A stretch of 64,000 nt of DNA from assembly GCF_006345805.1 (NCBI RefSeq), contig NC_042998.1, forward strand, positions 44,578,001 through 44,642,000, in the 5' to 3' direction. Position numbers and translations under genes: made by a program. Below, piece after piece: positions 7,417-57,785 of the stretch. The stretch comes from Octopus sinensis. Its lineage: Eukaryota. Positions within the stretch are counted from its first letter, which is position 1, and the number at the start of each line of letters is the position of its first letter. The notes under the pieces were generated by a model, which saw only the letters and a program-made list of their open reading frames with translations, was not told the DNA's origin and searched no databases.

Positions 7417-8314
<898 letters not shown>

Positions 8315-8900
8315 GCTTGTACAGACCAGCTAGGTTCCTTACTGGCCGTTTGCAAAAATGAGACTATGATTTATTACTAGAACAGTTATAATATTAATGC
8401 GTATTACCTTATTTTATTTGCATTTAGATTTGCTTTAAATAATAGTCTGACGCGTCTACGAAATTTCTAATTAATCATGTCTTTCATTTATGCGTGCTGT
8501 ATGCTAATTCATCGATTCTTAAGTATTTGGATGTCTATATCTGATCTCATTCTCTTATCTCAGATTCTTTATCTAACATGATACTGTCCTTAATTCTTCT
8601 CTCTTGGAAATCGTTTTGGCGCATTTTACTAAGCTGAATCTCTTATTTATTACTATGGAAAGTCTGCGTACTGTCTGCTGTAATGTTTCCGGCTGTTTAT
8701 CATTTCCAACATGCAACTCCAGACCATCCATATACATTGGTGGTTAATTCTCCTACCGTTAATATTTGTATCCATATCCAGTTTTACTTAGCATGTTGGT
8801 CAAAGTTGTCAACATCAGGGGAAAAAAAAGGATTTGGGAGTGAGTTTTCCCCACAAATATTCCTTTTCTAACTAATGGAGATTTAGCTTTTAGATTACAG
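8315..8900 (-). mobile_element. Older decayed R4/Dong-like RT fragment
   Basis: Minus-strand translation across frameshifts gives LTNMLSKTGYGY, RINH, YMDGLEL (8723-8734), RFSLVKCAK and SKYLRIDE, which follows the order of the R4 RT core. Confidence 0.65.
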
Positions 8901-33199: not shown

Positions 33200-33709
33200 T
33201 CTCATTGCTTACACGTGACCATCGTCCATCTTTCTTTTCTTCACATAACCATCTTTGTTTTCCAGCACAAACATTCTAAGGACTGGACGGCTTTATCGCT
33301 CTCTTTTATCTTTTATCTTTTCAAAGAAAATATTTCTAAAAGCGTTCACTATCTTTCTCCTCGTTCTGGTCTAACGACCCTACATATTTGTGTTCGTTCG
33401 GTTTTTAAGTATCTCTCCACTATCCTGTTTTGTCTCCAAATTTGACTCTCCATAAAATCCAAAATTTATTTTGGAAGTTATGAGAGCAACTGTCTTCGAA
33501 GTCTCATATTCTCGTTGATTGCTCGAAACGCGGTGTGCATAAATCGGGGTGACAACTGATGAAGGAATTATTCTTTATGTTGCCTGTCTCGTTTCTCTAA
33601 TTGTTTCTTTCGTTGTCCGAAAAAAAGTTCGCTTTCCATGTTTTTGTTGTTTTTTATGTTCTCGTATTTCATTTTGTTCACATTTTTTACGTCATGTACC
33701 CATATATGC

Positions 33710-33761
<52 letters not shown>

Positions 33762-34400
33762 GCATATATGGGTACATGACGTAAAAAAATGTGAACAAAA
33801 TGATATACGAGAACATAAAAAAACAACAAAAACATGGAAAGCGAACTTCTTTTCGGACAACGAAAGAAACAATGGGGTGTATAATGTCGAAGACAGCCGT
33901 AGTTCTCACAATCATAATAGTAATAAGAACGCCGTTTTAATATCGGAAGCCAATCCCAATAGAATAAGGTTTTTATCTAGTAATTCCAAGATTAGAAATG
34001 CCATTTACCAATGCAGAGTTTATACTGGATCGGATGTTTACTCGTATATCGGAGCGTCATCATCAAAATTGGCCGTGAGAATATCGAACCACTTCACAAC
34101 TTTTCGCGATTTTAGAAAACAACACGCTACCGGACTAAGTAAACTAATCTGGCGTTTGAAGAACGCGAATTCAGCATTTAGACTGGAATGGTTGATTTTA
34201 TCGGTGGCTGTACCGTTTGATAGGGGCAAAAGAATCTGTAATCTCTGCAACTCTGAACTTTTTCACATTTTGTTCGCCCGAGGGCAGCTAGTTAACGGGA
34301 TTTTGCAACACTCTTTCAGATGTCCCCACTGGAGGCGACTGACATTTCTTGCATACAATTGAAGACTAAGATAATTAACACCTTGATGTCCTAAGAAAAG
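33200..34400 (+). mobile_element. Penelope-like element remnant (pLTR-like segment, palindrome, GIY-YIG endonuclease)
   Basis: GIY-YIG ORF plus an inverted duplication centred on (TA)n. Outer boundaries are approximate. Confidence 0.7.
33874..34362 (+). CDS. Penelope-type GIY-YIG endonuclease reading frame (no RT upstream, no clear start)
   Basis: NAIYQCRV...SYIGAS...RISNH...TGLSKLIWRLK...LEWLIL...CNLCNSE...CPH, open for about 160 codons. Confidence 0.8.
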   Translation, partial: GVYNVEDSRSSHNHNSNKNAVLISEANPNRIRFLSSNSKIRNAIYQCRVYTGSDVYSYIGASSSKLAVRISNHFTTFRDFRKQHATGLSKLIWRLKNANSAFRLEWLILSVAVPFDRGKRICNLCNSELFHILFARGQLVNGILQHSFRCPHWRRLTFLAYN

Positions 34401-45774: not shown

Positions 45775-46857
45775 TGTTTCTTTATTAGCCACACAGGGCT
45801 GCACACAGATAGAACAAATTACAAGGTAGAGCTTTTCTTTTGAAGGTTTAAAAAAAAAAAAAAAAAGGAAGGGGGAGTTTCGATCAAAAGGGATCGTAAA
45901 AGGAGAGAAAGAGGACAAAAAAAGGGGGGGTTAAAAAAAAAAAAAAAATTGATCAATAGGGATCGTTATCACAGAAATGTCAATATGAAGTGTAAAGGGG
46001 AGGACAGGTGAGGTTTACCCGTGGAACGAAAAGCCTACGGAAAAGACAACGGTAACCTCGGTCAATGAAGTCACATTTTATATTCCTTTTTTTTTTTTTT
46101 TTTTTTTTTGCAAATAAGCAACTCTCTGTTTTCGATTTCTGGGTTCATAGGACTATGCTCAAGGTGGCTTCGTCATTCATACGTGCCATTCTTGCTACAT
46201 TCACCCATCTTTTTTTAAAACATTCGCTAGACAAAATTTGCCTCTCTACTCTCACTTTCCTTTTCAAGTGGTACTTGAAGAAGTTGATGAGAGATTGACC
46301 AGAGAGGAAAGTGTTTGTCTCCAATCCTTTCAGACGCGTCCACCAGATACATTCTTTCGCCATAGCCACAAGGATGATGAAAATAGCTCTTCCTTCCCGT
46401 TTGAAGGAAGGAGGCGTGACAATATTGACGATAGACTCAGCTGATAAACCGACTCGTCCCACACGTGACAGCAGTTGTTCGACATAAGCCCACAGGTCGG
46501 AAATTGTTGGACACTGAACGAGTGCGTGCAGAACGGTTTCGTCGCTCTGACCGCATCTCGGGCAGGTCGGCCCCGTGTTTCTCGAGCCGTGTCTGTAGAG
46601 CTTATCCCGAACGGGTAGTGCTTCTCGGTAGCACTGCCAGGCCAGGGATCTCTGGAAGTTGTCCATGGGCCCTGGCCCGAAAGTCGTCCCGAACAGGCGG
46701 GTCAGGTACTCCTCGTCGACGTCCAGGTTCGCCCCGAGCTCGTCGTCGTACCTCCCCTCCACTAAACCCCTATAGAATGCTTTGGTTGTGTTGAAGTCAC
46801 TTAAGGTCGACCCAGGACGGCAGAGTTGCTTGAGAGCAACGCGACACTCGCGGTGCC
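45775..46857 (-). mobile_element. 5'-truncated L1/Tx1-like LINE (ORF2 C-terminus and 3' UTR) inserted in (GATA)n
   Basis: About 237 open codons with a zf-RVT-like knuckle AWQCYREALPV...CPRCGQSDETVLHALVQC...LW, stop at 46145-46147. The 3' UTR ends aataaagaaaca. (ATAG)n lies at 45753-45774 and 46858-46948. Confidence 0.92.
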
Positions 46858-46949
<92 letters not shown>

Positions 46950-47764
46950 TGAGAGAGAGGGAGAGAGAGATGCACTGGTAGACAGTTAGAGAGATAGATA
47001 TTTCTATATATACACTATGAACATGCGCGCTTGCCTGTCTATGTGTGTGTGTATGCGTGTGTTACTGTCGAATAATTTTTTCCTGTTAGATAACATCAAT
47101 TAATGACTGGTGGGAACCAAGAACAGCAAAAATTAAGCTTACGAAGAGACTGGCAGACAAGCTGGTATCTCGCTGGTCTAATAAATTGGCAACGTGTCCT
47201 TTGAACAAAATGATTGCAAACTAAAGAGATAAAGAATTCTTCTGGTGTAAATTTTGACATGTTAATCTTTCTTCATACAAAGCGAGATAAATTTTTGCTA
47301 AACAAAACAAGAGAAAGAGGTCTTGTTAATTTATATTTTACACTATTGATTTTTTTTGTTTCCATTCGTTAATTTTGATCTATTCTTTATATAATTTGCA
47401 TTTTTTTTTGCTTTTTATTTCCATTAAACTATTTGGTATCGTTTATTATTTGTGTCTATTTGAATGTACGCTTAACTCTTTATCAAGAGAATACTAAGAA
47501 TATAATATGGTTATAAAACAATGGGAAACTATTGGTGATCCAGCAGTAATTTCAAAACCACTCACCTGATGACGTGCGAGTACACGGCTATTGCTGGATC
47601 ATATTTATATAATATTTATATAATATTTATATAACAGTATGTGAAACACACTGTTACAAATGCACAGAAACAATTGTTGTGATTTGGATTAAAGCCTGTT
47701 TGTACCATCTTCCTGTATTATAAATTATATATAAATGTTCATATATGTACATGCATATATATAT

Positions 47765-52405: not shown

Positions 52406-52510
<105 letters not shown>

Positions 52511-53017
52511 ATGCATGCATGTACGTATGTATGCATGTATTTATGTGTGTATTTATATATAAAGGATCTGTCTTTCATCGACTGAAGACGTACTTTTCAT
52601 AGTTCCCGTCAAGTCAGTAGCCAAAGAAGCATATTTCAACTCAAGCCAGCAGAAACTCTCCTTGTTTTTAGTCCCAGAACTTTTGAATTCTACAATTCTA
52701 CTATTCTACTCTTTTACTACCATCGGAGGATAAATTTATACAAATCTATATACAACCTGGAGAAAGAAATATAAACCAAAACTAAACCCAAGACTAGTTC
52801 TAAAACTAGTCCCGTCAGTACAATTCTTTTTTCTTGATCTGTATTAAACACACCGCTCATCCTGATTTGTACTAAATACACTGAACTCTCCTACACACAC
52901 TCAGATATAGCCACGCATTTCCGAATATATCGACTCAAACTTTTCAACGGTGTATTCACTATTATACATCAAGCCATCAATAACTGACGTACAGTGTATA
53001 ATACTGTCCCACTGAAT

Positions 53018-54222
53018 ATGGCCAATAATATTCAAAAACGCCACTGGGTTGAATATGAAATCACTGCACTAATAAACGCTTGGTACACTCACCACAACGA
53101 AGCTAATGTTTACAGTAAAATAGCTGAAAAATTAGCAAAACAATCCTTTCACAGATCTGTAAAACAGATCGAAAATAAAATTAAAGAGATTGTAAGAACA
53201 TTTCCTATTTTCCACACGCACATGGCAACACTAGAAGCCATCCTTGTCAATGAATGTAGTGCACCAAATGACCCAACCCCAACAGGTCAGGGGTCACTTC
53301 AATGACCCGATAGCCAGCAACAAACATCTGACCTAATTCCGCCCATTCCACCCAACACTACCTTGGCAAGCCAGAACTCACTATCACAACAGCCTGCTTC
53401 TGCTACCACATTGGAACCAGTACCTGACCCGATTCCACCCAGCCCTACTGTTGCAAGTCAAGTTTCACTGCTTCTACAGCAACAACAACAACAACAACAA
53501 CACTCTGCTACTGCTACTACAGCCAGAATAGAAAAACCACTACTACACTCACATAAAACACCCTGCCGTTACTATTCTCAAGGCAACTGTAGATTTGGCC
53601 CCAGCGGCACCAACAACAAGGGACGCTGTGCTTTTTTCCATACTACCTTATGTCGTAGACTTGTTAAGGGCACCTGTCCATATGGTATAACGGGAAAAAA
53701 TTGCCCTCACCTCCACCCCAAATACTGTCCTAAATACAGAGTCCATGGTCCTGATCCCAAATATGGATGCACAAAAGGCAATGGATGCACCTTCTTCCAT
53801 CCTAAACTGTGCCAAACTTCTGTGTCACTAAGGATGTGCCTGAACCCAGAATGCAACCACCACCATCTGAAGGGCACAAAACGATCGCAAAATAAATATA
53901 AACAGCAACAGAGGAGATCTACGACAACAACAAAAACAAAATACAACCACGTTTCTCCTCCTACAATCAAACAACGTAGACAGAACCATGAAAAAACCAT
54001 AACACCAACATGAATTATGTATCCTCTGACCAAGTGGCAAATCAAAGAGGTAACTCTTTTTTTCTGACTTACCTAGAAAATATGAAGGCCGACCTAAGCC
54101 AGGAGATCCAACGAGCTATCAGCAACCACCTTGGCAGATCACAAGGACCACACACCCACTACCAACAAGAAAATCATACACACACAGCTCCATACAAGAA
54201 CTACCCACATTATTACCACTGA
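53018..54222 (+). pseudogene. LINE ORF1: Myb/SANT-like trihelix domain, Q/P/T-rich linker, four CCCH zinc fingers, helical C-terminus
   Basis: ORFs 52994-53305 and 53363-54013 are in the same frame, separated only by TGA at 53303. A probable frameshift leads into 54010-54222 (FFLTYLENMKADLSQEI). Confidence 0.8.
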
Positions 54223-54247
54223 ACAACATAAAACATAACTTAGAACA

Positions 54248-56389
54248 ATGCAAACATCAAACTTCCCTTACCTCGAAATTCCTGTTAAATGTACGTGGCA
54301 TCAACTCATCAATTATTGCCCAGAAATGGAAGATCCTATATATAGAGAGTTGGCTTGCCGAAACGGCACTTTGCTTCCCTTTCTTTATCCTTACCGAGAC
54401 TCACCTGAACAACACCCATATGGACGCTGAGGTGAAAATAAAAGATGTCACCATTGTTCGTGAGGATCGCACAGACCGAAATAAGGGAGGGACAGCCATC
54501 TTTATCCATGACTCCTTTTCACTTGATGCCAAGGACATATTTTCCAATGGCTATTGTGAATCTGTATCACTATTAAGCTAGGCCAAGGACATAATCAATG
54601 TTGGTCTTTACAGGCCTCCCCAAGCACCTCTAAAGTGCTGTCTCACCCATTGGGCCATTGATTGATGATAACGGCATTCCCCAACACGATGCTAAAGAAA
54701 TGGCAGAAATACTGCAGAAACAATACTGCTCTGTCTTCAGTGTTCCCACTGATATTGACGTAAGAGAAGCGAACGAAGTTGACTCCCAACATAAAATCTC
54801 AGACATAACATTCACTGTCACTGACATCATAGCAGCAATAAATGAGGTCAAATACTACTCTGCTGTAGGCCCTGATAGATTCCCCGCTAGTCTCCTGAAG
54901 GAATGTAGACACCAACTTGCAGTCCCTCTGACCAACCTCTAGAGAAATTCGTAGGACGCAGGTTATATACCGAAACAGTTTCTATCCCAGTCAGTCATCC
55001 CGGTTTTCAAACAGGGAAACAGATCCCTCGCACTCAACTATCGCCCAATCTCACTCACCTCCCACATCATTAAAGTGTTTGAAAGAGTGTTAAGATCAAA
55101 GATAGCTGACTTCCTGGAGACCCACAAACTCCTAAATGCAAATCAGCATGGCTTTCGCTGTGGCAGGGACTGTCTAACACAGCTCTTACACCACATTGAA
55201 GATATACTCAAAGCCTTGGGAACAGGTTCGAACTCTGATGTCATATATCTTGACTTCAGTAAAGCGTTCGACGGGGTAGACCATAATACCCTACTCTCAA
55301 AATTGGCAAATGTTGGAATCCGTGGAAAAGTTCTACACTGGATTAAGTATTTCCTGGCGAATAGAACACAACATGTTGTAGTTGATGGAGTCCACTCAAG
55401 CCCAGCAAAAGTCACCAGCGTTGTCCCCCAGGGGACTGTCTTGGGTCCGCTACTCTTCATAATTTACATAAACGACCTTTCCAGTGTCGTACATTACTGC
55501 AAAGTGAAAATATTTGCTGATGACACTAAGCTCAAACAAATCGTCAATGAAGAAACAGACCGAACTCAACTCCAGTCTGATCTATATGCTGTGAGTCAAT
55601 GGGCGGACAGAAACAAAACGCAACTGAACGAGGGAAAATTTGAGCTGATGCATTTTGGAAGAAATTCCTCACTAAAACAGCCATACACTCTTCCTTCAGG
55701 GGAACCGCTCACAGCCGCTAACAATATCAGAGACCTGGGTGTAATTGTTGATGACGATCTCAGTTGGAGTGCACACATCAACAAGAAGGTTGATATAGCT
55801 CGTAGGATGAGCTCCTGGATCTTAAGAACTTTCCGGTCCAGAGAACAAGGTGTCACTTTTCTCCTCCTTTGTACGGTCACACCTCGAATACTGCTGCCCC
55901 CTGTGGTCTCCCCATACAAGACAAAATATCTCGAGGATTGAATCACCCCAGAGGGCACTCACTAAACGAATTGAAGGTATGGCTGCTCTCAATTATTGGG
56001 ATCGCCTTAAAACCTTGAAACTCTACTCTCTCCAGCGTCGCCGTGAGCGGTACATCATTTGTACGATGTGGAGAATATACCGCCAACTTTGCCCAAACGA
56101 CCTGAACATTAGCTTCAAGGTTCATCCAAGACTGGGACCACGGGCCATACGTCCCCTGTCCAATTCAAGATCACAGCATACATGTACACTGCAACATAAT
56201 TTATTTTCCTCAACAGGCCCTGCCCTATTTAACATTGTCCCGAAAGAGATCAAAGAGGAAAAGGATCCCATCAACTTTAAACGGAGTCTGGATAGATTCC
56301 TTCAAAGAAAACCAGATAAACCACCCATAATTGGATACAACTCCCCCAACAAAAACTCACTACTTGAATGGACCATAAACAAAACTTGA
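54248..56389 (+). pseudogene. LINE ORF2: partial APE endonuclease and reverse transcriptase
   Basis: APE motifs LNVRG (54285), LTETHL, REDR..NKGGTA and YRPP (54609), then a deletion near 54645. RT motifs NYRPISLTS, NQHGFR, YLDFSKAFD, VPQGTVLGPLLF, FADD (55513-55524), RSHLEYCCPLWSP, LYSLQRRRER. Stops at 54940 and 54952, frameshift near 55865. Confidence 0.95.
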
Positions 56390-57785
56390 CTTAAACAGGA
56401 TTCAAATAATCCTATCAGGTGGTGCTATTAAGTTAGACATGGCCTGGACCAATCTTTGGTCGAAACATATCTAAGTTTATCTAAGTTTATATATACACAC
56501 ACACATATACTGAGACACAGAGATTGGTTCACGCTCAGAAGGCATTGAATTTGTCTAACTGAGCCTTTAGCAGGAGATAGAGGATACAGTGAAATGAAAT
56601 CAAAACTGGAGCCAGATGATAGGGGGTCTAACTAAACATCGATGCCTTCATCCTTAATGTGATCGGGAGTGAATGACTTATTTGATTTATGCTGGAATGC
56701 CCGTCTGCGAAAACATTCAAGTTTATATCTAACACGTTTTGATCTGTTGTTTCTGATTGAAATTGTGATACGTGTTTACCGATGTATGCAGCAATATTGA
56801 AAAATAAAAAGACCTTCTACATATTTCTTATGCTTCGTATTTAAAATCTAATGTTTTCTTCTACGTATGAGAACACAAATAGTCTATTATTTCATACAGA
56901 AACAGCTATATATTATTTTTGTATATATATATATGCATGCACATATATACAGAGATTTTCTGTGTTCTTTCACTGACGCTTGCCTCAATGCCTTCTTGTT
57001 TTAATGGAAATAAAACGATAGCGGGTCTGTACTGATTACTCTGATGTCGATGCCTCATATGGCTTTTCTTTAATACTGGAAACTACAATACCTTCTGACA
57101 TAAAATCAGAAACACTGAATATCGATTTATGATTATGATTTTTCTTTTTTTTTTTGTTAATTTCTGATATGCAAAAGACGTTTGAAAAGATTCGTGAGGG
57201 CAGAAAGCTATTTAGTTCAAGAAATGGAATAACAAAATAATAAAACTCCTCTTTGTATTCCTTCTCTCACTCAATCTATTTGCCTCCTTTCTCTCCATCT
57301 TTCTCCCGCTATTCCTTTCTTTCTCTTTATCATAGATAAAGAAAGAGAGATCTATCTATCTATATATCTGTCTGTCTATCTATGTATCTCACACTTTGTC
57401 CTGCTAGCTACCTATCTTTTTCCTCGCAATCTCACATGAAGATATATCGATCCAACAAACAGAACATATACACATTTTCTTTCCTTTGTATAAACTCACT
57501 GTTTCTCTCTTTATACTTATATAAATTTCGTTTCTCGTTTTCCTCCTCTTACTCCTTCTCCTCCATTCTCTTTGAATTATTTATTAGGTCAAACAGTACC
57601 CCGGTCCAATCAATCTTATCGCAACTCCTCAATACAAAATGTTAAGTATTTCTGATCTCCAAATGCAATTCCAATCAGAATAACATAGTACTCAAACACA
57701 CACACACACAAACACACATTCGAGGACGTGCATATCTACTCATATATATGTATCTATAGATAAAGATAGGGAGGCAGGGAGGTAC

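What the first reader, a model, noticed from the sequence alone, without database searches (positions are those of the whole stretch)
53018..54222. LINE ORF1 with a Myb/SANT-like trihelix domain fused to four tandem CCCH zinc fingers
The N-terminus (about 53033-53205, W-x3-E-x3-LI-x2-W...Y-x2-IA-x2-L-x4-F-x-RS-x2-QI-x2-KIK) fits the trihelix/Myb_DNA-bind_4 pattern familiar from Harbinger accessory proteins. It is followed by C-x7-C-x12-C-x3-H, C-x7-C-x8-C-x3-H, C-x13-C-x5-C-x3-H and C-x8-C-x4-C-x3-H (53564-53866). Commonly described CR1/L2 ORF1 types use RRM, PHD, esterase or CCHC modules. A DNA-binding trihelix plus an RNA-binding CCCH array is an architecture I do not recognise as described. 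It might tether the element RNA to chromatin or autoregulate the element (inference). The two ORFs are in one frame split by a single TGA, plausibly CGA>TGA decay.
Basis: partly seen in the sequence, partly recalled or inferred. Interest (0 to 1): 0.78.

Follow-up and report, generated by a model that had tools for sequence, protein, structure and literature searches.

The report
Dead LINE with Myb-plus-CCCH ORF1
This is a decayed copy of a jumping gene (a LINE) whose first protein joins a Myb/SANT-like DNA-binding domain to a zinc-finger RNA-binding module; the zinc-finger module is common in related elements, but there it comes with a PHD finger, so the Myb part is an unusual swap seen so far only in this one copy.

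Summary
Window 53018-54222 (+) is the ORF1 region of a dead APE/RT LINE spanning about 52562-56485. Residues 8-63 hit Pfam Myb_DNA-bind_4 above its curated cut-off (38.1 bits against 27). Four CCCH motifs with exactly the stated spacings follow in the same frame after one TGA.

- **CCCH module:** fingers 2-4 are a strongly conserved unit. It matches 1625 protein clusters, its Cys/His ligands are 90% or more conserved in 150 sequences, and AlphaFold pLDDT is 95-98. On contigs it lies directly upstream of an APE+RT ORF2, so it is a widespread LINE ORF1 module. Pfam has no dedicated model for it, and the ORF1 typology I could read does not list it.
- **Relatives:** in almost all long relatives the N-terminal partner is a PHD finger. 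None of the 149 carries a Myb domain.
- **Myb part:** the Myb-for-PHD swap rests on this single decayed copy. The three closest relatives are cut by contig ends before that point. One of them shares sequence upstream of the TGA and has its own stop at the same or the adjacent codon. A true fusion, a separate upstream ORF and stop-codon readthrough therefore all remain open.

Verdict: a new variant of a known kind, of moderate interest.

The parts
52552..52561 (+). Candidate 5' target-site duplication, TTTATATATA, inside an (AT)n(TG)n(TATG)n microsatellite
   Evidence: The same 10-mer occurs at 56486-56495. A match of 10 bp or more is seen in about 3.5% of control window pairs, so this is suggestive only.
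52562..53017 (+). Putative 5' UTR of the LINE, containing an 8-bp tandem ATTCTACT x4 at 52687-52719
   Evidence: The C>G strand skew (-0.33) typical of the element starts here and is absent from the upstream flank. All three frames carry stops.
53018..53305 (+). ORF1 N-terminal part: ATG, Myb/SANT-like (Myb_DNA-bind_4) domain at aa 8-63 (53039-53206), a fourth helix to aa 80, then TGA at 53303-53305
   Evidence: Pfam PF13837 at E 2.2e-9, 38.1 bits against cut-off 27. AlphaFold predicts helices 2-25, 28-42, 48-61 and 65-80 at pLDDT about 70. L004 shares 53261-53297 at 81% identity.
53306..53563 (+). Low-complexity P/S/T/Q-rich linker, open in the ORF1 frame
   Evidence: 85 codons without a stop in frame 0, against 2 and 4 stops in the other frames. 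It is homologous to the linkers of L001 and L004. AlphaFold predicts it disordered.
53564..53641 (+). CCCH finger 1 (C-x7-C-x12-C-x3-H), specific to this subfamily and probably a partial duplicate of finger 2
   Evidence: Present in the window and P0001, and partly deleted in P0004. pLDDT is below 50. 104 of 150 relatives have 3 fingers and 8 have 4.
53651..53866 (+). Conserved three-finger CCCH core: fingers 2-4 at 53651-53716, 53726-53800 and 53810-53866
   Evidence: All twelve ligand residues are at least 90% conserved in 150 sequences. pLDDT is 95-98. 596 protein clusters match at E<=1e-10.
53867..54013 (+). Basic, variable-length region ending at TGA 54011-54013. A frameshift lies somewhere within about 53990-54050.
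   Evidence: Relatives read through this region into the C-terminal helix.
54010..54222 (+). ORF1 C-terminal part in the +1 frame: amphipathic helix NSFFLTYLENMKADLSQEIQRAISNHL plus tail, stop TGA at 54220-54222
   Evidence: Conserved with P0001, P0003 and P0004. An F of the FLxxL motif is at least 90% conserved in the 92 long relatives.
54223..54639 (+). Start of ORF2: N-terminal about 130 aa of the AP endonuclease, with TAG at 54579-54581. Homology to relatives stops at 54639, where about 280 codons are deleted.
   Evidence: Frame translation. blastn to L001 and L003 ends at 54639. The homologous L001 protein hits Exo_endo_phos_2 at 7.6e-16.
54640..56389 (+). Rest of ORF2: linker, reverse transcriptase and C-terminal domain. 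Stops at 54940-54942 and 54952-54954, a frameshift near 55850-55865, and stop TGA at 56387-56389.
   Evidence: RVT_1 at E 2.4e-25. The RT is 49% identical to ORF2 of L006/L007 and 43% to that of L010.
56390..56485 (+). 3' UTR ending in the 10-bp tandem repeat TATCTAAGTT x2.3 (56468-56490)
56486..56495 (+). Candidate 3' copy of the target-site duplication TTTATATATA, followed by (CA)n

Best explanation
**What it is.** Window 52562-56485 holds one decayed, about 3.9-kb copy of an APE-type LINE of the CR1/L2-like ('Jockey superfamily') kind. The intact element would be about 4.8 kb.

**ORF1 protein layout, in order:**
1. A Myb/SANT-like three-helix domain.
2. A disordered P/S/T/Q-rich linker.
3. 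Four CCCH zinc fingers. The last three form the conserved core of a very large ORF1 family.
4. A basic stretch.
5. A short amphipathic helix.

**Proposed mechanism (inferred, not shown).** The CCCH core and the basic stretch bind the element's own RNA. They take the role that RRM/CCHC modules play in other LINE ORF1 proteins. The C-terminal helix drives multimerisation. The N-terminal module ties the ribonucleoprotein to chromatin or target DNA. In relatives this N-terminal module is a PHD finger (a reader of histone tails), sometimes with a chromo-like domain. In this lineage it has been exchanged for a Myb/SANT-like DNA-binding domain, which fits the known modular, shuffled evolution of ORF1.

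**State of this copy.** It cannot be functional:
- TGA at 53303.
- A frameshift somewhere in about 53990-54050.
- TAG at 54579.
- Loss of about 280 codons of the endonuclease at 54639.
- Stops at 54940 and 54952.
- A frameshift near 55850-55865.
For: **Shown**
- Pfam Myb_DNA-bind_4 scores above its cut-off.
- The CCCH spacings and ligand conservation hold up.
- AlphaFold pLDDT is 95-98 for fingers 2-4.
- 1625 related protein clusters match only the CCCH core.
- In L001, L002, L006-L008 and L010 the CCCH protein sits immediately 5' of an ORF2 with Exo_endo_phos_2 and/or RVT_1.
- The window RT is 43-49% identical to the ORF2 of PHD+CCCH elements.
- PHD-like C4HC3 patterns occur in 56 of 67 long relatives, and Pfam finds PHD in 21 of 92. 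The family profile matches solved PHD fingers.

**Evidence that the Myb part belongs to the element**
- It shares the reading frame with the rest of ORF1, apart from one stop.
- The A>T and C>G strand skew is continuous from 52563 to 56386 and absent from the upstream flank.
- The linker is open only in the ORF1 frame.
- A copy about 30% diverged (L004) is collinear with the window back to 53261, upstream of the TGA and 55 bp after the Pfam match.
- A candidate 10-bp target-site duplication brackets the whole unit.

**From established knowledge:** tandem CCCH fingers bind single-stranded RNA, and LINE ORF1 proteins are RNA-binding chaperones.
Against: - No second copy of the Myb part was found in any collection I could search.
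- None of the 149 relatives has a Myb domain.
- The three closest relatives (L001, L003, L004) are cut by contig ends before the Myb position, so Myb and CCCH are seen together in one decayed copy only.
- L001 and L004 have an ATG about 15 codons before the first Cys, and their CCCH frame is -1 relative to the linker frame.
- L004 has a stop next to the window's TGA.
- Foldseek gave no significant match for either model.
- The candidate duplication is low-complexity sequence with a background rate of about 3.5%.
- No function was tested.
Confidence: 0.6

Rival explanations
1. Three-ORF or readthrough element. The stop after codon 95 is ancestral. The Myb/SANT-like protein is then a separate small upstream ORF ('ORF0'). 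The CCCH protein starts at its own ATG just before finger 1. Alternatively, leaky termination at CAA-TGA-C produces both a short Myb protein and a Myb-CCCH fusion.
For: - The window has CAA TGA C and L004 has CAA TAA C at the same or the adjacent codon, although the two copies are only about 70-80% identical.
- L001 and L004 both have an ATG about 15 codons before the first Cys. The prokaryote-style gene caller started P0001 and P0004 there.
- The linker stays open after the stop in the window and in L004, as readthrough would predict.
- From general knowledge: A at -1 and -2 and C at +4 favour readthrough.
Against: - Only two sequences bear on the stop.
- Both stops are one transition away from CGA or CAA in a Gln-rich tract, so independent decay is plausible.
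- MAFFT places the two stops one codon apart, not at the same codon.
- In intact PHD-type relatives the N-terminal module is fused to the CCCH core in a single ORF of 371-654 aa.
- The window itself has ATA, not ATG, before finger 1.
Confidence: 0.25
2. One-off chimera. The Myb-coding DNA is not part of the LINE family. It was joined to a 5'-truncated copy at this locus, by 5' transduction, by template switching, or by simple adjacency to an older fragment such as a Harbinger Myb-like gene or a host MSANTD-type exon. On this reading the shared reading frame is luck.
For: - All 149 relatives lack the domain.
- No homologue of the Myb part exists in 5.8 billion protein clusters or in the contig collections.
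- Myb_DNA-bind_4 is typical of Harbinger accessory proteins and host genes (general knowledge).
- A chance in-frame junction has a probability of 1 in 3.
Against: - L004 homology runs upstream of the stop to 53261, so any junction must fall within 53207-53260.
- The strand skew continues through the 5' UTR and the Myb part.
- No transposase ORF, terminal repeat or other long ORF lies nearby.
- The candidate duplication encloses the Myb part.
- The Myb ORF has its own ATG preceded by stops, and 95 open codons.
Confidence: 0.12
3. The Myb call is a false positive. Residues 1-80 would be a diverged or degenerate form of the helical region that precedes the PHD finger in relatives, and the PHD finger was lost by deletion.
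For: - MAFFT placed window C80, and the stop at position 96, on columns that are Cys in 85/86 and 89/102 sequences.
- An HMM of the relatives' N-termini gives a nominal E of 0.006 with Z=1.
- Foldseek does not confirm a Myb fold.
Against: - The HMM score is only 2.6 bits.
- hhalign gives P of 0.08 (local) and 0.65 (global), with probability below 1%.
- The Pfam hit is 11 bits above the curated cut-off.
- None of the 92 long relatives hits any Myb family at E<=0.01.
Confidence: 0.05

Closest known systems
PHD-type ('Type III') ORF1 of CR1/L2-lineage LINEs (Kapitonov & Jurka 2003; Khazina & Weichenrieder 2009; Metcalfe & Casane 2014, PMC4120745)
   Same: - ORF1 sits upstream of an APE+RT ORF2.
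- An N-terminal chromatin-type module is followed by a disordered linker.
- The evolution is modular and shuffled.
- The relatives found here (for example P0006, P0020 and P0013) carry a PHD finger in that position, and their ORF2 is 43-49% identical to the window's RT.
   Different: - The window has no PHD finger. A Myb_DNA-bind_4-like domain occupies its place.
- The published typology does not mention the CCCH core, which here is the most conserved part of the protein.
- I could not test whether the published Type III elements contain it.
R2 retrotransposon N-terminal zinc-finger plus Myb DNA-binding module (PMC11204384)
   Same: A non-LTR retrotransposon protein carries an N-terminal Myb-type helical DNA-binding domain. 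In R2 this domain positions the element on its target DNA. That is the best precedent for a DNA-tethering role.
   Different: - R2 has a single ORF with a restriction-like endonuclease and C2H2-type fingers.
- R2's Myb is a classical c-Myb-type motif in the RT-bearing protein.
- Here the domain is of the Myb_DNA-bind_4/trihelix type and lies in ORF1 of an APE-type element, next to CCCH fingers.
Myb/SANT-like accessory proteins of PIF/Harbinger transposons and host MSANTD/trihelix factors (Pfam PF13837)
   Same: Same Pfam family for residues 8-63, with the pattern W...E...LI...W / Y..IA..L....F.RS..QI..KIK.
   Different: - No DDE transposase or terminal inverted repeats lie nearby.
- The domain lies in the frame and transcription unit of a LINE.
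- No close homologue identifies a donor.
Tandem CCCH RNA-binding proteins (CPSF30, RBM22, ZAP, TIS11d)
   Same: Several consecutive C-x-C-x-C-x3-H fingers. The best, though non-significant, structural and sequence matches are to CPSF30 and RBM22 fingers.
   Different: - The spacings are non-canonical (x7/x8, x13/x5, x8/x4).
- The Pfam zf-CCCH models stay below their cut-offs.
- The three fingers are predicted as a single high-confidence unit with no significant match in the PDB.

Membership tests
APE-type non-LTR retrotransposon (LINE), CR1/L2-like | Reverse transcriptase domain | tested here: met
   RVT_1 at E 2.4e-25 for 55075-55941.
APE-type non-LTR retrotransposon (LINE), CR1/L2-like | AP endonuclease at the N-terminus of ORF2 | tested here: met
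   Only the first about 130 aa remain in the window (54249-54639). They are collinear with L001 and L003, whose full domain hits Exo_endo_phos_2 at 7.6e-16. The remnant alone gives no Pfam hit.
APE-type non-LTR retrotransposon (LINE), CR1/L2-like | ORF1 immediately upstream of ORF2 on the same strand | tested here: met
   Window. L001, L002 and L006-L010.
APE-type non-LTR retrotransposon (LINE), CR1/L2-like | 3' end with a short tandem repeat rather than a poly(A) tail | tested here: met
   TATCTAAGTT x2.3 at 56468-56490, with no A-tail.
APE-type non-LTR retrotransposon (LINE), CR1/L2-like | Placement of the RT within the CR1, L2 or another named clade by phylogeny with reference elements | not tested
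   No labelled reference RT set was available. Supplements either lacked clade labels or were not held. The clade name is an inference from RT motifs and the 3' end.
Myb_DNA-bind_4 / trihelix (Pfam PF13837) | Profile score above the curated gathering threshold | tested here: met
   38.1 bits against 27, E 2.2e-9, model positions 2-67 of 89.
Myb_DNA-bind_4 / trihelix (Pfam PF13837) | Three-helix Myb/SANT fold | tested here: inconclusive
   AlphaFold predicts helices 2-25, 28-42 and 48-61 plus a fourth, at pLDDT about 70 from a single sequence. Foldseek against the PDB finds nothing significant.
Myb_DNA-bind_4 / trihelix (Pfam PF13837) | Binds DNA | not testable with these tools
   Needs EMSA or SELEX.
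Tandem CCCH zinc-finger proteins | Cys3His ligand sets conserved among homologues | tested here: met
   All 12 ligands of fingers 2-4 are at least 90% conserved in 150 sequences. pLDDT is 95-98.
Tandem CCCH zinc-finger proteins | Match to curated zf-CCCH profiles above threshold | tested here: not met
   The best hit is zf-CCCH_4 at 19.1 bits against 24.6. It is partial and covers finger 1 only. Hits among relatives are similarly weak.
Tandem CCCH zinc-finger proteins | Binds zinc and single-stranded RNA | not testable with these tools
   Inferred from the family only.
PHD-type (Type III) LINE ORF1 | PHD finger (C4HC3) in ORF1 | tested here: not met
   There is no PHD hit or pattern in the window's ORF1. 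It is present in 56 of 67 long relatives. The window element is related to this type through its CCCH core and RT, but lacks the defining domain.
PIF/Harbinger Myb-like accessory gene | Association with a DDE (Harbinger) transposase and terminal inverted repeats | tested here: not met
   No other long ORF lies within 50-60 kb, and none of that kind occurs anywhere in the window. I ran no dedicated scan for inverted repeats.

The most novel reading that the evidence does not exclude
An APE-type LINE lineage, apparently in a mollusc or cephalopod-like genome, replaced the histone-reading PHD finger of its ORF1 with a sequence-reading Myb/SANT-like domain and spread in that form. Translation may pass through a conserved leaky stop (CAA-TRA-C), giving both a free Myb protein and a Myb-CCCH fusion. 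If so, the N-terminal module of this ORF1 family would be an exchangeable chromatin/DNA-targeting head on a constant CCCH RNA-binding body. The three-finger CCCH body would itself be an unrecognised major ORF1 type.
Probability: 0.2. Interest if true: 0.7.

Novelty: new variant of a known kind. Interest (0 to 1): 0.45.

Why it matters
ORF1 proteins of CR1/L2-like LINEs are poorly understood. The survey I read states that the role of their PHD finger has not been studied functionally (PMC4120745).

Two points follow from this work:
- **A missed module.** A compact three-finger CCCH unit is the conserved core of more than 1600 ORF1 protein clusters. No Pfam model captures it, and the five-type ORF1 scheme does not list it. 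It is worth a family definition and a biochemical test as the RNA-binding part of these proteins.
- **A clue to the N-terminal module.** The N-terminal position takes different chromatin or DNA-binding heads: PHD, a chromo-like domain, and here Myb/SANT-like. That points to a tethering or targeting role, which can be tested by swapping heads.

The weak point is that the Myb variant rests on one dead copy. Its standing as a family feature needs the source genome.

Tried and rejected
**Searches for more copies of the Myb part**
- Other copies in the window: none (blastn and tblastn).
- Homologues of the Myb part: none in the 5.8-billion-cluster protein collection, IMG/VR, JGI metagenomes or GTDB genomes. 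An exact look-up of the 95-aa product found nothing.
- Loci of the close CCCH subfamily in JGI metagenomes, viral contigs and GTDB genomes: none.
- Cluster look-ups gave no names and no longer contigs.

**Searches that returned little**
- A profile search with the 150-sequence alignment against the word-indexed collection returned only 2 proteins. The likely cause is that low-complexity words filled the candidate list, so that search was wasted.

**Structure and homology tests**
- Foldseek of the full ORF1 model gave only non-significant CPSF30 finger matches. Foldseek of the Myb-only model gave nothing.
- phmmer of the Myb part against PDB sequences gave only chance helical matches.
- I tested whether residues 1-110 are a degenerate form of the relatives' helical+PHD region, as the MAFFT columns suggested. 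I rejected it: hmmsearch gives 2.6 bits, and hhalign gives P 0.08-0.65.

**Clade and literature**
- Clade assignment from paper supplements failed. Either no clade-labelled RT sequences were present or the files were not held.
- Literature searches for Myb/SANT or CCCH in LINE ORF1 found nothing relevant. Khazina & Weichenrieder 2009 is not held.
Full report
**1. The observation**

An ATG at 53018 opens 95 codons that end at TGA 53303-53305. The same frame then runs on to TGA 54011-54013.

Residues 8-63 hit Pfam Myb_DNA-bind_4 (PF13837) at E 2.2e-9 and 38.1 bits, against a curated cut-off of 27. The hit survives when the joined 331-aa sequence is scanned.

The four Cys/His motifs have exactly the stated spacings and span 53564-53866. 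Generic zf-CCCH Pfam models touch only finger 1, weakly and below their cut-offs. Homology nevertheless shows the motifs are real (section 3).

**2. The element around it**

*Downstream.* The first about 130 residues of an AP endonuclease follow (54249-54639, TAG at 54579). Homology to relatives then stops at 54639 and resumes in the linker between the endonuclease and the RT, which implies a loss of about 280 codons. Next come the reverse transcriptase (RVT_1, E 2.4e-25), stops at 54940 and 54952, a frameshift near 55850-55865, and the ORF2 stop at 56387-56389. The 3' UTR ends in TATCTAAGTT x2.3.

*ORF1 C-terminus.* ORF1 also continues past 54013. After a frameshift it reads NSFFLTYLENMKADLSQEIQ... 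to TGA at 54220-54222, and relatives conserve this stretch.

*Upstream.* 52562-53017 looks like a 5' UTR.

*Boundaries.* A 10-bp TTTATATATA occurs at 52552-52561 and again at 56486-56495. It could be a target-site duplication, but 3.5% of control window pairs share such a match.

*Overall.* The element sits in a microsatellite, is about 3.9 kb long and is dead. The window holds no other copy.

**3. The CCCH module is a widespread LINE ORF1 core**

An exhaustive HMMER search found 1625 protein clusters at E<=1e-3 and 596 at E<=1e-10. All of them match only residues about 209-300, which are fingers 2-4.

In a 150-sequence alignment, all twelve ligands are at least 90% conserved:
- C212, C220, C229, H233
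- C237, C251, C257, H261
- C265, C274, C279, H283

With that alignment, AlphaFold gives pLDDT 95-98 for this stretch. The linker and finger 1 are low. Foldseek finds only non-significant CPSF30 finger matches.

On contigs the protein is followed within about 15 nt by an ORF2 with Exo_endo_phos_2 and/or RVT_1. This holds for L001, L002, L006-L008 and L010, and some of these copies are intact. The window's RT is 49% identical to ORF2 of L006/L007 and 43% to that of L010, so ORF1 and ORF2 tell the same story.

All hits come from ENA or Logan assemblies and carry no names.

**4. What relatives carry where the window has Myb**

- 56 of 67 long relatives have a C4HC3 PHD-like pattern N-terminal to the CCCH core.
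- Pfam finds PHD in 21 of 92 and PHD_4 in 11 of 92. No Myb family appears at E<=0.01.
- The family profile matches solved PHD fingers such as MTF2, MLL and KAT6A.
- phmmer with the window's Myb part finds nothing among the 149 relatives.

Some relatives add a 2A-like peptide, a chromo-like segment or an OTU-like protease. The N-terminus is therefore the variable part, and the CCCH core plus the C-terminal helix is the constant part.

I tested whether the window's N-terminus is a degenerate form of the relatives' helical+PHD region, and found no support.

**5. Does the Myb part belong to the LINE?**

The closest relatives are L001/P0001, L003/P0003 and L004/P0004, at about 69% DNA identity. All three are cut by contig ends before the Myb position. 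The evidence is therefore indirect:
- The Myb part shares the ORF1 frame.
- The 95-codon frame is open, which has a chance probability of about 0.002 from the composition.
- The A>T and C>G skew runs continuously from the 5' UTR to the end of ORF2 and is absent from the upstream flank.
- The linker is open only in the ORF1 frame.
- L004 is collinear with the window back to 53261. That is upstream of the TGA and only 55 bp after the Pfam match: APNDPTPTGQGS in the window against ALTDPMATGQVS in L004.

Against this, no other copy of the Myb part exists in any collection I could search.

I put the probability that the Myb part is a genuine component of this LINE subfamily at about 0.85. That figure combines the fusion reading and the separate-ORF reading. 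I put a one-off chimera at about 0.12.

**6. Fusion or separate ORF?**

L004 has TAA where the window has CAA-TGA. The two stops fall at the same codon if a 3-nt gap is allowed, and at adjacent codons in the MAFFT alignment. L001 and L004 both have an ATG about 15 codons before the first Cys, and in both the CCCH frame is -1 relative to the linker frame. The window has ATA at that site and stays in frame.

Two readings fit these facts:
- The stop and the ATG are ancestral. The Myb protein is then a separate small ORF, perhaps with readthrough.
- Each is independent decay in a Gln-rich, repeat-rich tract where stops and indels arise easily.

Intact PHD-type relatives encode their N-terminal module and the CCCH core in one ORF, which favours a fusion by analogy. 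Three decayed copies cannot settle the matter.

**7. How it most likely works (inference)**

The CCCH core and the basic stretch bind the element's RNA. This is the usual job of ORF1 proteins, and tandem CCCH fingers are single-stranded-RNA binders in CPSF30, ZAP and TIS11d (established knowledge). The amphipathic helix FLxxLExMKxDL drives multimerisation. The N-terminal head binds chromatin or DNA and brings the particle to its integration site. The head is PHD in most relatives and Myb/SANT-like here. R2's N-terminal zinc-finger and Myb module, which positions R2 on its target, is the precedent (PMC11204384). Nothing here tests binding.

**8. Comparison with what is known, and novelty**

The ORF1 survey of CR1, L2 and Jockey lineages lists RRM, CCHC, PHD, esterase, Tnp22/coiled coil and zf/lz. 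It stresses domain shuffling and notes that the PHD finger has not been studied functionally (PMC4120745). It mentions neither Myb/SANT nor CCCH, and my text searches found no such report.

The element fails the defining feature of the PHD type because it has no PHD finger. Through its CCCH core and RT it is nevertheless clearly a relative of that type.

I rate it a new variant of a known kind. Interest is moderate. ORF1 modularity is expected, and the Myb variant rests on one dead copy. The unclassified, very common CCCH core and the exchangeable N-terminal head are still useful leads.

Noticed in passing
Relatives P0020, P0048, P0059, P0075, P0079, P0088, P0093, P0094, P0112 (aa 73-130); L010 523-2274 for P0020: Nine of 150 CCCH-type ORF1 relatives carry a 2A-like ribosome-skipping motif (G[GI][VI]E.[NH]PGP) upstream of their PHD finger, inside ORF1. 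Odon et al. 2013 (PMC3708506) found such motifs mostly at the N-terminus of ORF2, and in ORF1 in only one element (L2A-1_NVe).
   Followed up: partly
Relative P0032 (654 aa) and relative P0096 (471 aa): P0032 has an OTU-like cysteine protease hit (PF02338, E 5e-4) N-terminal to its PHD+CCCH part. By eye, P0096 starts with a chromo-barrel-like segment (KVHYIGWRSSFDERIP) before its PHD finger. These are further examples of exchangeable N-terminal heads in this ORF1 family.
   Followed up: no
window 54190-54222 and the C-termini of P0001, P0003 and P0004: The three closest relatives end in QCCH or QCCQ directly before the stop. The window reads HYYH, with both Cys codons changed to Tyr by G>A. 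This may be a small conserved C-terminal Cys/His motif of the subfamily. Its role is unknown.
   Followed up: no
window 52410-52560 and 56495-56515: The element is flanked by (AT)n(TG)n(TATG)n upstream and (CA)n downstream, so it was inserted into a compound microsatellite. I could not judge whether this reflects a target preference.
   Followed up: no
window 7514-8355 (-) and 46145-46975 (-): Two other retroelement remnants. Their ORFs carry the zf-RVT domain (PF13966): E 6.5e-6 (27.2 bits, just under the 27.5 cut-off) and E 3.2e-8 (34.5 bits). They are unrelated in sequence to the element studied.
   Followed up: partly
window 33601-34362 (+): A 253-aa ORF contains a segment that by eye resembles a GIY-YIG-type motif (VYSYIGASSSKLAVRISNH) and a Cys pair near its end, as in Penelope-like elements. 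Pfam gave no hit.
   Followed up: partly
window 54223-54300: The endonuclease frame of ORF2 has no ATG near its start, either in the window or in L001. The only nearby ATG (54248) is in another frame. How ORF2 of this subfamily starts translation is unclear. It could be by reinitiation or a non-AUG start, or decay may have removed the ATG in both copies.
   Followed up: no
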